This document shows, piece by piece, positions 5,798 through 63,119 of a DNA stretch of 64,000 bases (within the stretch, counting starts at the first letter, position 1; each line of letters opens with the position of its first letter). The notes under the pieces are model-generated. The model was not told the origin of the DNA, searched no databases, and was given only the letters and a program-made list of their open reading frames with translations. The position numbers and the translations under genes are program-made. The stretch lies in IMG/VR virus record IMGVR_UViG_3300005613_000001, positions 248,001 to 312,000 of that record; one strand, written 5' to 3'.

Positions 5798-6117
5798 ACG
5801 TATTGCTTACATTCGCTAAAGGGCAATATTTCTACAAAGTGGTATGGCACAGTAGAATCATCATCATATTCTTCCGGTTTTCCCTCAATCTTATACACGG
5901 CCATGCGGGCATCATCGGGGGTGTGTTTTATTTTCCAAAGATCCATCACCTTTTGACCTAATGTTTTATCTTCTTGATCTTCAGTCAATTTTGCAATATG
6001 CATCTTCGGAGGGAGGGGAGAACTAAGGGATACAACCGAACTGGTCAACCCGTCTAGCGGACCACCATAATGAATTGTGTCAAATTCGTAGCCGTATCCA
6101 TCAATATCAATTTTCAT
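5794..6117 (-). CDS. Hypothetical protein
   Basis: ORF overlaps thyA start (ATGA); contains GGPLDG motif common in small phage proteins. Confidence 0.6.
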   Translation of the reverse strand: MKIDIDGYGYEFDTIHYGGPLDGLTSSVVSLSSPLPPKMHIAKLTEDQEDKTLGQKVMDLWKIKHTPDDARMAVYKIEGKPEEYDDDSTVPYHFVEILPFSECKQYV

Positions 6118-6120
6118 TTA

Positions 6121-6166
6121 GGACGGCGACCAGGATTCGAACCTGTTAGCCCAAACGCTCACCGTC
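6121..6166 (-). ncRNA. tRNA-like minihelix (acceptor stem plus T arm, no D or anticodon arm)
   Basis: GACGGTGA pairs with TCGCCGTC (8 bp, one GU); CAGG-TTCGAAT-CCTG T arm; 13-nt connector. Confidence 0.45.
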
Positions 6167-58566: not shown

Positions 58567-58965
58567 TCATTTTTCAATTGGTTTTTCAGGTTCTTTAACG
58601 GTATCTTCGGGTTTCTCAACTGAATCTTCTGGTTTTTCGGGCTTAACAGGTGGTGCCCATCTGGTACACAACATTTGCCCAGGACCAGTGTAAATTGTAT
58701 ATTCTACGCCTCTGTAGTAGGCATAATGCCAATTCTGGGGTTCTAGAATTTTTGCATCTAGAGTTTGGGTATCATCAATTAACTGTTGGGCAATTTTCTG
58801 TTCAACTATTGCCTCAAGTTGGGACTCTGTAATTGTAATAGTTTTCTCTTTTGGTGCCTCCTTTTTTGGTTCTTTCTCTTGACCGTAAGCTCCTGCTAAG
58901 AACACACAGGCTACGATACTTAGACAACCAATGCACACCACTGCAACAATCGCTCTTGTAGACAT
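58567..58965 (-). CDS. Secreted/exported hypothetical protein
   Basis: Signal peptide-like N-terminus; KPE repeats; AGGAG upstream. Confidence 0.6.
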   Translation of the reverse strand: MSTRAIVAVVCIGCLSIVACVFLAGAYGQEKEPKKEAPKEKTITITESQLEAIVEQKIAQQLIDDTQTLDAKILEPQNWHYAYYRGVEYTIYTGPGQMLCTRWAPPVKPEKPEDSVEKPEDTVKEPEKPIEK

Positions 58966-58975
58966 TTCTACACTC

Positions 58976-59077
58976 CTAAGGGTTCAGATTTTCAACTACA
59001 ATCTCAGCTACGAACAATAGCGTGCCGAATAATGCACCACACAAAGCACCCAACACGGCTATGTCACGATATTTCAT
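58976..59077 (-). CDS. 33-aa hydrophobic peptide
   Basis: Hand translation MKYRDIAVLGALCGALFGTLLFVAEIVVENLNP; ATG at the 3' end of the RNase P RNA. Confidence 0.4.
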   Translation of the reverse strand: MKYRDIAVLGALCGALFGTLLFVAEIVVENLNP

Positions 59078-59379
59078 AATTCTTAATCCCGTAAGCCAAC
59101 TTCTGTTCTATGTTGTCATTTATCTTTTGGCCGCTACCCGTCCTCATCGAGCCGCTCACCCTCTCGGACTGTTTGCGTTGCTGCCTCGGTGGTGCAAGCG
59201 AGATATGCGAGATATGATTCATCGTCAGCGAAGTTATATGGAACAATTCCTATTTGCTCCCAAACTTCGAATCGTTGAATCATATCTTTCAATTATCTCT
59301 CCCACCTTAAGCGGTACAGGCTGGACTTTCCTCACATTCCACTTTCATGGAGTAGTGCGACAACTCGGATTAAGAATTA
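59077..59379 (-). ncRNA. rnpB: RNase P RNA (catalytic subunit), compact bacterial type-A-like
   Basis: GAGGAAAGTCC (59323-59333), AGATAAATGAC and ACAGAA-GTTGG-CTTAC (59091-59106); 13-bp P1; P2 GTTGTC/GACAAC; GNRA-capped P3; P4 AAGTCCAGC/GTTGGCTT with bulged U. Confidence 0.88.
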
Positions 59380-59726
59380 ACTGTATCTATTCTGGTCTTC
59401 CAACGCCAAGTATGTAACCACACTCTAGCATTCTTGGCGTGTTCTGCTACATCTTCACCTGGATGTTTCGCTTCGTGTGGCAACTTCCACCCCGAATTTC
59501 TTTTGAGGCGGTCTTGAATTATTTTTTCTTGTTCCTCAAATGAAGGGGAAGTATTGATGCACACTACTAGATCAAAAGGCCAACAACTGACCACTTTACC
59601 TTTTCTGCCCGCGTGTTTGCCCTTTGTGATTAAAGCTTCTCTATCTTTGTTGTACTGACGCGACATGCTATGGATGCCAGAACTGATAAACAATAGGACA
59701 ATTATTAGACATATAGCTGTAATCAT
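59370..59726 (-). CDS. Hypothetical protein
   Basis: ORF whose stop codon lies in the P1 5' strand of the RNase P RNA; start uncertain. Confidence 0.5.
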   Translation of the reverse strand: MITAICLIIVLLFISSGIHSMSRQYNKDREALITKGKHAGRKGKVVSCWPFDLVVCINTSPSFEEQEKIIQDRLKRNSGWKLPHEAKHPGEDVAEHAKNARVWLHTWRWKTRIDTVNS

Positions 59727-59841
59727 TTGCCTTTGCCTTATTTGTAGTGGGAATCCCACCAATTCCTAATATAATTCTTACCGAAAACTGATTGCCAAAT
59801 GTTACATGGAATATCTATAAACAAGTAGCACAATACATTAA

Positions 59842-60213
59842 TCATTGAGGCGGCTTCCAATACATCGTGCCCGAGAATGGTTTTGATAATCTGTAATCTT
59901 TGTTTCTTCCCTTGTTTGGGATTAATCCATTTCTTCGGTAAAATCGGGTCAATGCAGCTTTCTTTCCTTTGCCGGGTTCAGGGGCTACTATCAAAGGTTT
60001 GCCAACGGATGCTGCAAAATCTTTCAGTGCTGATATTACTGCTGATCCAATTCCTTGGTTTCTACTATCTTTGTGAATTTTAATGTCCGACAATTCTACG
60101 GAGTAAATATTTTCCCAAGCAAAAAGTGACGCTATTTCTGGATACTGCTGTTCCAGAGAAGCCACTAGTTTTTGAAGTTCGCTATTCTCTTCTAGCCATT
60201 GTCGGAATTGCAT
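59842..60213 (-). CDS. GNAT acetyltransferase with CTS-like N-terminus
   Basis: MQFRQWLEENSE; RNQGIGS, RFYRRNG; TAAATA 4 nt upstream. Confidence 0.8.
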   Translation of the reverse strand: MQFRQWLEENSELQKLVASLEQQYPEIASLFAWENIYSVELSDIKIHKDSRNQGIGSAVISALKDFAASVGKPLIVAPEPGKGKKAALTRFYRRNGLIPNKGRNKDYRLSKPFSGTMYWKPPQ

Positions 60214-60220
60214 ACCCTAT

Positions 60221-60415
60221 TTAGGGCTGTTTTCTGATTTCCTGATCTATCTCCCTAACCTCATCTTCTATGCCTGAAATTCCCTTTTTAAATTCAGAGA
60301 TACCCTGGCCCAGCCCTTTCATCGCACCAGGAAGGCGTTTTCCAAAGAGCAGTATCCCTATCACCCCGATGATGATTAGCTCAGTTGGGCCGGGCATACC
60401 TATAAATGCGAACAT
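60221..60415 (-). CDS. tatA: Twin-arginine translocase subunit TatA/E
   Basis: GMPGPTELIII...LLFGKRLP...GLGQGISEFKKG; AAGGAGG upstream. Confidence 0.9.
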   Translation of the reverse strand: MFAFIGMPGPTELIIIGVIGILLFGKRLPGAMKGLGQGISEFKKGISGIEDEVREIDQEIRKQP

Positions 60416-60455
60416 ACAAACCTCCTTATCTATCATACCATAGGATTTCGGAACG

Positions 60456-61009: not shown

Positions 61010-61025
61010 ATTATAAAACCTCCAG

Positions 61026-61109
61026 CGGAAGGCACGGGACTCGAACCCGCAACCGCATTATACGGCAGGTGATTTCCAGTCACCCCGCTAGCCAATTCGC
61101 TTACCTTCC
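61026..61109 (-). tRNA. tRNA-Ser(GGA), CCA not encoded
   Basis: Cloverleaf GGAAGGT/GCCTTCC, anticodon arm GGTGA-CTGGAAA-TCACC, long variable arm, GGTTCGAGTCC. Confidence 0.93.
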
Positions 61110-62987: not shown

Positions 62988-63036
62988 TAAAACAAGCCCT
63001 TATCTACATTCTACCATAGATAAGGGCAAAGGAAAG

Positions 63037-63119
63037 TGGCCTTGGCGGGATTCGAACCCGCACGGGGATACCCCCACATGGTCCTGAACCATGCGCGTCT
63101 GCCATTTCGCCACAAGGCC
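63037..63119 (-). tRNA. tRNA-Leu(CAG), CCA not encoded
   Basis: Cloverleaf GGCCTTG/CAAGGCC, anticodon arm CATGG-TTCAGGA-CCATG, long variable arm, GGTTCGAATCC. Confidence 0.95.

What the first reader, a model, noticed from the sequence alone, without database searches (positions are those of the whole stretch)
59077..59379. Phage-encoded RNase P RNA (ribozyme) hidden under spurious ORFs
The universally conserved regions are present in order. P1 is a perfect 13-bp helix (59367-59379 with 59077-59089), P2 is GTTGTC/GACAAC and P3 has a GAAA tetraloop. GAGGAAAGTCC, AGATAAATGAC and ACAGAA...GGCTTA are intact. P4 is AAGTCCAGC/GTTGGCTT, compensated relative to E. coli AAGUCCGGG/CCCGGCUU and retaining the bulged U. 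At ~303 nt it is shorter than E. coli M1 RNA (377 nt), with a divergent specificity domain. It sits tightly between phage ORFs, near two CCA-less type II tRNAs, with no rnpA in the window. Inference: the phage supplies its own tRNA 5'-maturation ribozyme, borrowing or sequestering host RnpA, possibly to resist host RNA-targeting defence or to process tRNA-like elements such as 6121-6166.
Basis: partly seen in the sequence, partly recalled or inferred. Interest (0 to 1): 0.92.

Follow-up and report, generated by a model that had tools for sequence, protein, structure and literature searches.

The report
Phage RNase P RNA without S-domain
A 527-kb T4-like phage carries its own copy of the RNase P ribozyme, the RNA enzyme that trims tRNA precursors, but without the half that normally recognises the tRNA; related phage sequences carry the same minimal form, and I found no published description of it.

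Summary
On the minus strand at 59077-59379 lies a homologue of bacterial type A RNase P RNA. It scores 57.3 bits against Rfam RF00010 (E about 1e-16), below the curated cut-off of 100, so routine annotation misses it. P1, P2, P3 (GAAA loop), P4 with its bulged U, P5, the P6 pseudoknot, P7, P15, P16, the GGU of L15 and conserved regions I, IV and V are all intact.

P7 is capped by a roughly 100-nt rod hairpin.

A related phage contig (L186) has the same RNA at 92% identity, against 77% for the flanking gene. It lacks the rod entirely and is about 200 nt, a bare catalytic domain. Two more members (L189, L190) lie in tRNA arrays, one next to a CCA-adding enzyme gene. Seventeen base pairs show compensatory double changes.

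The contig is a genuine phage (Gp23 capsid, gp32). At least 35 viral contigs carry RNase P RNAs, mostly in tRNA arrays, and I found no paper describing this.

Most likely it is an active C-domain-only ribozyme that uses host RnpA. That is inferred, not shown.

The parts
59077..59379 (-). RNase P RNA homologue: bacterial type A catalytic domain plus a rod insertion, 303 nt
   Evidence: RF00010 57.3 bits, E 1.2e-16, full model. Helix model verified. Fold z -5.2. 92% identical orthologue in L186.
59367..59379 (-). P1 5' strand, pairs with 59077-59089
   Evidence: 13/13 Watson-Crick pairs. The upstream ORF's stop codon 59372-59370 lies inside it.
59359..59364 (-). P2 5' strand GUUGUC, pairs with GACAAC at 59112-59117
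   Evidence: 6/6 pairs. Compensated in L189 and L190.
59333..59357 (-). P3 hairpin with GAAA tetraloop (59343-59346)
   Evidence: 9 of 10 pairs. L186 keeps the GAAA loop with a shorter stem and a U-A to C-G change (by eye).
59323..59333 (-). CR-I GAGGAAAGUCC (J3/4 and P4 5' strand; bulged U at 59325)
   Evidence: Exact match to the universal motif. Invariant in A1 and A4.
59320..59328 (-). P4 5' strand AAG-U-CCAGC, pairs with GUUGG-CUU at 59093-59100 (pseudoknot with P2)
   Evidence: 8 pairs. The distal 3 pairs form in 140 of 144 collected RNase P RNAs in 19 combinations; the window's AGC/GUU is unique but pairs.
59309..59314 (-). P6 pseudoknot 5' strand CCGCUU, pairs with GAGCGG at 59152-59157 in the P16/17 loop
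   Evidence: 6/6 pairs. Compensatory changes in L189 and L190. L064 has a 7-bp equivalent (by eye).
59302..59306 (-). P7 5' strand GGUGG, pairs with CCACC at 59188-59192
   Evidence: 5/5 pairs. G-C to U-A in L186 and two double changes in L189.
59200..59299 (-). Rod: four stacked helices (31 bp) capping P7 in place of the S-domain; lineage-specific expansion
   Evidence: Single long hairpin, z -6.95. Helices 6, 11, 7 and 7 bp. Absent from L186, where P7 is capped by a UUCG hairpin. Not repeated elsewhere in the window.
59132..59180 (-). J5/15 CAA, P15 (CGC/GCG), J15/16 AAACA, P16 (GUCC/GGAC), and the L15 3' side GGGUA (59135-59139) carrying the GGU that pairs with tRNA 3'-CCA in type A enzymes
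   Evidence: Block-wise identity with L064, L186 and L189. P16 compensated in L189. No P18.
59092..59125 (-). CR-IV (59117-59125), P2 3' strand, and CR-V ACAGAAGUUGGCUUA (59092-59106)
   Evidence: Exact universal motifs.
59370..59726 (-). Upstream gene: 118-aa small basic protein with an N-terminal hydrophobic segment; real gene, ends inside P1
   Evidence: 73% identical homologue P0002 with the same position relative to the RNA in L186. Weak KOW hit only.
58976..59077 (-). Downstream 33-aa hydrophobic ORF whose ATG abuts the P1 3' strand
   Evidence: called in L187. Its sequence is not conserved in L186, which has another ATG 5 nt further on.
59022..59417 (+). Spurious 131-aa ORF antisense to the RNA; likewise the 52-aa ORF 59134-59292(-) and the 60-aa ORF 59064-59246(-)
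   Evidence: No Pfam or PHROG hits. Similarity to L186 and L189 is confined to the conserved RNA blocks. One gene caller left the region empty and another called the 52-aa ORF.
61025..61109 (-). tRNA-Ser(GGA), type II, no encoded CCA
63036..63119 (-). tRNA-Leu(CAG), type II, no encoded CCA

Best explanation
The element is a phage-encoded RNase P RNA derived from the bacterial type A ribozyme. It has kept the complete catalytic (C) domain and lost the specificity (S) domain.

Shown:
- It is homologous to type A RNase P RNA.
- P1-P7, P15 and P16 and both pseudoknots (P4, P6) are intact.
- It is under purifying selection.
- It belongs to a small family of C-domain-only RNAs of about 192-303 nt on phage-like contigs.
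- The roughly 100-nt rod on P7 is a dispensable expansion specific to this phage.

Inferred:
- The RNA is cut out of a minus-strand polycistronic transcript.
- It binds the host's RnpA protein, because no phage rnpA was found.
- It cleaves the 5' leaders of phage tRNA precursors. Substrate recognition would rest on the acceptor stem, on the 3'-CCA through the conserved GGU in L15, and on protein-leader contacts, not on the T-loop/D-loop docking that an S-domain provides.
- The benefit to the phage would be extra or host-independent tRNA-processing capacity during infection.

The confidence given (0.65) is for the whole statement, including the inferred catalytic role. For the 'shown' part alone I would put it at about 0.95.
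For: Homology: RF00010 matches the full model at 57.3 bits, E 1.2e-16. The other family members score 61.4-65.5 bits, and bacterial class A is the best clan member for each.

Core intact: CR-I, CR-IV, CR-V, J5/15 CAA, the bulged U in P4 and L15 GGGUA are all present.

Selection:
- The L186 orthologue is 92% identical in the RNA, against 76.6% for the upstream gene DNA and about 53% downstream.
- 17 base pairs in P1, P2, P4, P5, P6, P7 and P16 show compensatory double changes among the window, L186, L189 and L190.
- The distal P4 pairs form in 140 of 144 RNAs.

Link to tRNA maturation:
- L190's copy is flanked directly by tRNAs in a 13-tRNA array.
- L189's copy lies between a tRNA-Leu array and a PolyA_pol/CCA-adding enzyme gene, E 1e-30.
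- 30 of 35 viral-contig RNase P RNAs have at least 3 tRNAs within 2.5 kb.

Feasibility:
- The E. coli C-domain alone is catalytic. It depends on a P6-type interaction and does not need P18 (PMC5839562). This family keeps a covarying P6 and lacks P18.
- Archaeal type T RNAs naturally lack most of the S-domain (PMC3579882).

Not an artefact:
- The sequence is identical in three assemblies from different samples.
- The window has phage hallmark genes.
Against: - There are no experimental data.
- The score is below Rfam's gathering cut-off.
- Without an S-domain, isolated bacterial C-domains are much less efficient (PMC5839562).
- P5 and P15 are only 3 bp.
- Unlike most phage copies, this one is not in a tRNA array. 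The nearest tRNA is 1.65 kb away. It sits among small membrane-protein genes with no promoter or terminator of its own, and P1 overlaps the ends of both neighbouring ORFs, so how it matures is unclear.
- Relatives of the phage found through the 269-aa neighbour lack it at the syntenic site.
- Only four clear family members were found.
- The more distant L200-L202 have changes in otherwise universal core positions and no Rfam hit, so part of the family may have left the catalytic role.
- The host and its RnpA are unknown.
Confidence: 0.65

Rival explanations
1. Retargeted ribozyme. The RNA is catalytically active, but loss of the S-domain has shifted it away from canonical tRNAs. Its targets would be other structured RNAs, such as acceptor/T-arm minihelices like 6121-6166, tmRNA-like RNAs, or sites in phage or host mRNAs.
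For: The S-domain that docks the tRNA elbow is gone. C-domain constructs cleave hairpin model substrates (PMC5839562). The window holds one tRNA-like minihelix outside the tRNA genes. This copy is not in a tRNA array.
Against: Other family members sit in tRNA arrays and next to a CCA-adding enzyme. Only one minihelix lies in 64 kb, and its predicted fold is not clearly better than chance (z -2.3). The GGU for CCA pairing is conserved, as expected for tRNA-type substrates.
Confidence: 0.14
2. Non-catalytic decoy or regulator. The RNA keeps the RnpA-binding C-domain in order to titrate or redirect host RnpA, or P1 acts in cis to control translation of the ORF that starts at its 3' strand.
For: No phage rnpA was found. 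RnpA binds the C-domain in bacterial holoenzymes (established knowledge). An orthopoxvirus RNase P-like RNA has been discussed as a possible decoy (PMC3001073). P1 overlaps the downstream start region in both the window and L186.
Against: A decoy does not need the bulged U of P4, J5/15 A, the L15 GGU or the P6 pseudoknot, yet all are conserved or compensated across the family. The co-location with tRNAs and a CCA-adding enzyme argues for processing.
Confidence: 0.12
3. Decaying relic of a captured host rnpB: no function, with the S-domain lost by deletion.
For: The score is low, the S-domain is lost, the genomic position is odd, and the RNA is absent from more distant relatives of the phage.
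Against: The RNA is more conserved than the flanking genes (92% against 77% and 53%). There are many compensatory changes. All universal core nucleotides are intact. Coding density is 96%, which leaves little room for junk. The same architecture occurs in unrelated phage contigs.
Confidence: 0.04
4. Artefact: an assembly chimera with host DNA, a misclassified cellular genome, or a protein-coding region.
For: IMG/VR contigs can include host DNA. ORFs of 131, 60 and 52 aa overlap the region.
Against: The locus is identical in three assemblies. The neighbour gene is syntenic in L186. The window has Gp23 capsid, head closure, gp32 and UvsX genes. GC content is like the surroundings. No species-representative genome carries this variant. 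The overlapping ORFs have no family hits and are not conserved as proteins.
Confidence: 0.01

Closest known systems
Bacterial type A RNase P RNA (Rfam RF00010; E. coli M1 RNA)
   Same: It is the best-matching family. It has the same P1-P7, P15 and P16 helices and the same P4 and P6 pseudoknots. CR-I, CR-IV and CR-V, J5/15 and the L15 GGU are the same.
   Different: There is no P8-P14 and no CR-II or CR-III, so no S-domain. P18 is absent. The size is 192-303 nt against about 330-400. The score is below the gathering cut-off. It is encoded by a phage.
Archaeal type T RNase P RNA (Thermoproteaceae; PMC3579882)
   Same: It is a natural RNase P RNA with an intact C-domain and most of the S-domain missing, with the P7/P10 region ending in a small loop. 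It was also missed by the standard models.
   Different: Type T is archaeal in sequence. It has a 3-bp P2 and a 2-nt P5/P15 linker, and it works with archaeal proteins. The phage RNA has a 6-bp P2, a 3-nt linker and a bacterial-type L15, and its best match is the bacterial model.
Engineered E. coli C-domain ribozyme (Eco CP RPR; PMC5839562)
   Same: It has the same domain content. It is catalytic without the S-domain, depends on a P6-type pairing, and does not need P18. The phage family keeps P6 and lacks P18.
   Different: It is a laboratory deletion construct with reduced efficiency. The phage RNAs are natural and under selection.
Orthopoxvirus (camelpox) RNase P-like RNA (discussed in PMC3001073)
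   Same: It is a virus-encoded relative of RNase P RNA with an uncertain role, and a decoy function has been considered.
   Different: It is a eukaryotic-type RNA in an animal virus. The review cited discusses it as a possible decoy and does not treat it as an RNase P enzyme.
Reduced RNase P RNAs of CPR bacteria (PMC8172020) and Mycoplasma fermentans
   Same: They are bacterial type A derivatives lacking several helices (P12, P13, P14, P18), and they are found only below the Rfam thresholds.
   Different: They retain the P7-P11 cruciform and are the cell's own essential gene.
Other phage-borne RNase P RNAs found here in tRNA arrays (e.g. L045 263.7 bits, L001 170.9 bits, L064 84.9 bits)
   Same: They are carried by viral contigs and are compact. 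L064 shares the P15-P16-L15 blocks with the window.
   Different: They keep a recognisable, though often reduced, S-domain, and they are embedded among tRNAs.

Membership tests
Bacterial RNase P RNA class A (RF00010) | Covariance-model score at or above the curated gathering score (100 bits) | tested here: not met
   57.3 bits. Relatives score 61.4-65.5 bits.
Bacterial RNase P RNA class A (RF00010) | Statistically significant full-length match to the model | tested here: met
   E 1.2e-16 over model positions 1-367; E 5.5e-15 in a 50-kb search.
Bacterial RNase P RNA class A (RF00010) | Universal conserved regions CR-I, CR-IV and CR-V of the catalytic core | tested here: met
   Exact motifs at 59333-59323, 59125-59117 and 59106-59092.
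Bacterial RNase P RNA class A (RF00010) | P4 helix with a bulged U, formed by CR-I and CR-V | tested here: met
   8 pairs plus the bulged U at 59325. Covariation across 144 RNAs.
Bacterial RNase P RNA class A (RF00010) | P1, P2, P3, P5, P15 and the P6 pseudoknot of the C-domain | tested here: met
   All form. 17 pairs have compensatory changes among four members.
Bacterial RNase P RNA class A (RF00010) | L15 GGU motif for the tRNA 3'-CCA | tested here: met
   GGGUA at 59139-59135. It is conserved in L186, L189, L064 and L200-L202, and is AGGUA in L190.
Bacterial RNase P RNA class A (RF00010) | Specificity domain: P7-P11/P12 cruciform with CR-II and CR-III (T-loop docking) | tested here: not met
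   Only P7 remains. It is capped by a rod in the window or by a small hairpin in L186, L189 and L190.
Bacterial RNase P RNA class A (RF00010) | Catalysis of pre-tRNA 5'-leader removal; assembly with RnpA | not testable with these tools
   Needs biochemistry. No rnpA was found in the window.
Archaeal type T RNase P RNA | Archaeal-type C-domain with a 3-bp P2, a shortened P15 and a 2-nt P5/P15 linker (PMC3579882) | tested here: not met
   P2 is 6 bp and the linker is CAA, 3 nt. The best Rfam clan member is the bacterial class A model.
Archaeal type T RNase P RNA | Most of the S-domain absent, with P7/P10 closed by a small loop | tested here: met
   L186, L189 and L190. In the window the cap is expanded to a rod.

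The most novel reading that the evidence does not exclude
Phages carry a natural class of bacterial-type, S-domain-less RNase P ribozymes of about 192-200 nt, which would be the smallest bacterial-type RNase P RNAs. These are active enzymes with elbow-independent substrate recognition. They form one end of a series of phage-borne RNase P RNAs that runs from near-complete to minimal. They serve as a phage-controlled tRNA-maturation module, alongside tRNA arrays, tmRNA and CCA-adding enzyme, that keeps translation running when the host's tRNA supply or processing is shut down or attacked.
Probability: 0.5. Interest if true: 0.85.

Novelty: new variant of a known kind. Interest (0 to 1): 0.8.

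Why it matters
RNase P is one of the two universal ribozymes, and phage tRNAs have been understood to be processed by the host's enzyme (for T4, PMC11143913). A phage-encoded RNase P RNA would add a ribozyme to the list of translation-related functions that large phages bring with them.

A naturally selected bacterial-type RNA consisting of the catalytic domain alone would also be a natural counterpart to decades of deletion work on M1 RNA. It would show which elements (P6, L15 GGU) evolution keeps when the S-domain is discarded, and it would provide very small ribozymes for structural and engineering work.

In practice these RNAs score below Rfam's cut-off and are covered by spurious ORF calls, so current phage annotation misses them.

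Tried and rejected
- blastn of the RNA and of 14 kb around it against deposited phages: no match.
- Syntenic search in relatives found through the 269-aa neighbour (L010-L043): no RNase P motifs.
- Genome scan for the window's exact P4 variant: 0 hits.
- Promoter and terminator scan: nothing brackets the RNA.
- cmscan's alignment of the P15-P18 region was rejected. I prefer the P15/P16/GGGUA reading, which is supported by L064, L186 and L189.
- The MFE helix GCUU/AGGC was rejected in favour of the covarying P6 pseudoknot.
- The upstream basic protein as an RnpA-like cofactor: weak KOW hit only, a conserved N-terminal hydrophobic segment, and absence from L189 and L190. I judged this unlikely and ran no structure prediction.
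- Protein-database search with the pseudo-ORF over the RNA's 3' half: no candidates.
- I counted base pairs for the model in a script instead of with the count of structure pairs, to avoid pasting a long structure string.
- blastn of three other phage-borne RNAs against deposited phages found only a mis-filed Salmonella contig and two unannotated metagenomic records.
- Nine literature searches found no report of a phage-encoded bacterial-type RNase P RNA. A 2024 review of RNase P does not mention one in the passages I examined.

Full report
**What is in the sequence**

A default Rfam scan of the window reports only one tRNA. A permissive scan of 58700-59800 gives an end-to-end match to bacterial RNase P class A (RF00010) at 59076-59376. 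The score is 57.3 bits and E is 1.2e-16, against a curated cut-off of 100 bits.

I verified each helix by script.
- P1 has 13/13 pairs, P2 has 6/6, and P3 has 9 of 10 with a GAAA loop.
- P4 has 8 pairs and the bulged U.
- P5 is CUG/CAG. P6 is a pseudoknot, CCGCUU/GAGCGG. P7 is GGUGG/CCACC.
- J5/15 is CAA. P15 is CGC/GCG and P16 is GUCC/GGAC. The L15 3' side is GGGUA. There is no P18.
- CR-I, CR-IV and CR-V are exact.

cmscan's own alignment of the P15-P18 part was poor. The reading above came from comparison with L064 and the later orthologues. The whole RNA folds far better than shuffled versions (z = -5.2).

**The S-domain is missing, not divergent**

cmscan left the middle of the RNA unaligned. 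On its own, 59180-59318 folds into one long irregular hairpin (z = -6.95). It has four perfect or near-perfect helices totalling 31 bp on top of P7. There is no P8/P9/P10 cruciform and no CR-II or CR-III. The rod is not a repeat found elsewhere in the window.

**The contig is a phage and the locus is not an artefact**

The window is part of IMGVR_UViG_3300005613_000001, a contig of 527,112 bp. It encodes the following:
- a Gp23-family major capsid protein, a head-closure protein and a gp32-like SSB;
- a UvsX-like recombinase, a DnaB-like helicase and a family A polymerase;
- homing endonucleases and nucleotide-metabolism enzymes.

Coding density is 96%. The closest deposited phages are 36% identical or less in UvsX, so the host is unknown.

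The same locus, with an identical RNA, occurs in two other assemblies from other samples (L187 and L188).

The ORFs that overlap the RNA have no Pfam or PHROG hits. They resemble relatives only where the RNA itself is conserved.

No RnpA family hit or RNR-motif ORF was found in the window. The bulk Pfam summaries list only the top 25 families, so a weak RnpA cannot be fully excluded.

The two tRNAs upstream on the same strand are Ser(GGA) and Leu(CAG). Both are type II and neither encodes CCA.

**The orthologue that settles the architecture**

A search with the small upstream protein found a 73% identical homologue on an 811-bp ENA contig, L186. Directly downstream of that gene, in the same register, lies the same RNA.
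- Its C-domain is 92% identical to the window's: 72/78 and 107/117 positions.
- The upstream gene's DNA is 76.6% identical, and the downstream sequence is about 53% identical, which is essentially unrelated.
- The rod is entirely absent. P7 is closed by a GG-UUCG-CC hairpin, giving an RNA of about 200 nt.

The RNA is therefore the most conserved element at the locus. The rod is a dispensable, lineage-specific expansion. This lineage's RNase P RNA is a bare catalytic domain.

**A family**

I ran motif scans for CR-I and CR-V at short spacing.
- L189 is a 39-kb viral contig. Its RNA is 192 nt and lies between a run of tRNA-Leu genes and a PolyA_pol/CCA-adding enzyme gene (E = 1e-30).
- L190 is a 1.5-kb contig binned with an Acidobacteriota MAG. 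It is essentially a 13-tRNA array, and the RNA abuts tRNAs on both sides.

Both have the same layout: a canonical C-domain up to P7, then "GA", a short hairpin, and a 6-7-nt 3' joiner (AUUUGCA or GUUUCA). L189 shares no proteins with the window, so the RNA type spans unrelated phage genomes.

All four RNAs match RF00010 best, at 57-66 bits.

On the tool's alignment A4, 17 base pairs show compensatory double changes relative to the window. They are distributed as follows: P1 two, P2 three, P4 two, P5 two, P6 three, P7 three, P16 two. Most of the broken cells in L190 look like register errors of the automatic alignment.

Independently, the three distal P4 pairs form in 140 of 144 distinct RNase P RNAs collected here, in 19 sequence combinations. 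Shuffled partners give about 53.

**Wider context**

Across spacings of 100-256 nt, 35 viral contigs carry the CR-I/CR-V pair. Thirty of them have at least 3 tRNAs within 2.5 kb, and 28 have a tRNA within 150 nt. tmRNAs are often present as well.

Rfam scores range from 264 bits for near-complete type A RNAs of about 328 nt down to 26-85 bits for RNAs of 243-330 nt. By length and score, phage-borne RNase P RNAs appear to form a reduction series whose extreme is the C-domain-only family.

L200-L202 share the family's P15-L15 block but have compensated changes in CR-I and CR-V, and they get no Rfam hit.

The window's copy is the outlier in context. It sits among small membrane-protein genes, 1.65 kb from the nearest tRNA, without its own promoter or terminator.

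**Mechanism**

[quoted passage not shown] It depends on a P6-type pairing and does not need P18 (PMC5839562). Archaeal type T RNAs naturally lack most of the S-domain (PMC3579882).

The phage family keeps exactly what those studies say is needed: P4, a covarying P6, J5/15 and the L15 GGU. It lacks P18.

I therefore consider an active, RnpA-dependent ribozyme for phage tRNA 5' maturation the most likely function (about 0.65). Substrate recognition would go through the acceptor stem, the CCA end and the leader.

CCA would be added after transcription. L189 brings its own CCA-adding enzyme. For T4, host RNase P is known to prefer CCA-bearing precursors (PMC11143913).

The rivals are a retargeted ribozyme, an RnpA decoy or cis-regulator, and a relic. 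The relic reading is disfavoured by the conservation pattern. Catalysis, RnpA binding, maturation of the RNA's ends and any role in counter-defence are all untested.

**Novelty**

Nine full-text searches and a 2024 review gave no report of a phage-encoded bacterial-type RNase P RNA. The only viral precedent found is the orthopoxvirus RNase P-like RNA.

Deposited phage genomes yielded only a mis-filed Salmonella contig and two unannotated metagenomic records.

I cannot exclude a report outside the searchable library. The ribozyme family is known. A bacterial-type version without the S-domain, and its carriage by phages, appear to be new, so I rate this a new variant of a known kind.

Noticed in passing
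window 6121-6166 (-): A tRNA-like minihelix just upstream of the ORF ending at 6117. It has an 8-bp acceptor-like stem (GACGGUGA/UCGCCGUC) and a T-arm with the GGTTCGAATCC consensus. It is the only such motif outside the two tRNAs (3 matches against 0.2 expected). ARAGORN does not call it, and the MFE fold prefers another pairing (z -2.3). It could be a tRNA remnant or an RNase P-type processing signal.
   Followed up: partly
window 59199-59216 (-): A tandem 9-nt duplication, CAUAUCUCG x2, in the 3' strand of the rod. It gives helix Ra (GAGAUA) two alternative pairing registers and suggests the rod grew by local duplication.
   Followed up: no
L001-L007, L045-L065, L195-L199 (viral contigs): RNase P RNAs are a recurrent component of phage tRNA arrays. 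They occur in 35 viral contigs, 30 of them with at least 3 tRNAs within 2.5 kb, and often beside tmRNA. Lengths are 243-330 nt and Rfam scores 26-264 bits. I found no description of this in the literature I could search.
   Followed up: partly
L200 8674-8861, L201 743-992, L202 7701-7923: Divergent RNase P-like RNAs in tRNA arrays. They share the family block GCAACGCAAACA...GGGUAGCGGCC. CR-I is changed (GAGGAAGCUC...) and so is CR-V (ACAGAAUCCUGGCUAU). By eye, P4 and its bulged U are kept through compensation. They get no Rfam hit, so they may be a further-derived subclass.
   Followed up: partly
window 59188-59306; L189, L190, L200-L202: A conserved asymmetric loop at the P7 cap: P7, then GA, then a helix that usually starts GAG and ends CUC and varies from 3 to over 30 bp, then a 5-7-nt joiner (GCUUGCA, AUUUGCA, GUUUCA, GCUUAUA), then P7'. 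Several joiners fit the U...A pattern of a T-loop motif. Whether this stub replaces S-domain contacts is speculation.
   Followed up: no
L189 2078-3394 (-): A CCA-adding enzyme / poly(A) polymerase-family gene (PolyA_pol head domain, E 1e-30) lies next to the S-domain-less RNase P RNA and to seven tRNA-Leu genes plus one tRNA-Ser. Similar genes lie near RNase P RNAs in L111, L130 and L196. In both the window and L189, every tRNA seen near the RNA is a type II tRNA (Leu or Ser).
   Followed up: partly
L190 581-791: The RNase P RNA starts at the 3' end of tRNA-Arg (508-582) and ends 2 nt before tRNA-Leu (793-876). Its ends could therefore be made by ordinary tRNA processing ('tRNA punctuation').
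   Followed up: no
window 58567-60436 (-): The RNA is embedded in a run of small membrane-type genes. These are a TatA/E-like protein (60221-60436, PF02416 E 2e-12), a GNAT-like 123-aa protein, the 118-aa protein with an N-terminal hydrophobic segment, a 33-aa hydrophobic peptide and a 132-aa N-terminally anchored protein. A phage-encoded TatA is unusual.
   Followed up: no
L052 3325-3528; L202 6227-6645: There is a group I intron within a phage tRNA array (L052, 68.4 bits). There is also a permuted tmRNA in L202 (119.4 bits; ARAGORN gives a tag peptide).
   Followed up: no
L064 5635-5877; L195, L197, L199: A subclass of 243-270-nt phage RNase P RNAs shares a reduced S-domain with conserved blocks CCGUGUGG...CCACUAAGC...AAGCA. 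L064 would be smaller than the smallest bacterial RNase P RNA I know of (Mycoplasma fermentans, 276 nt, from memory).
   Followed up: no
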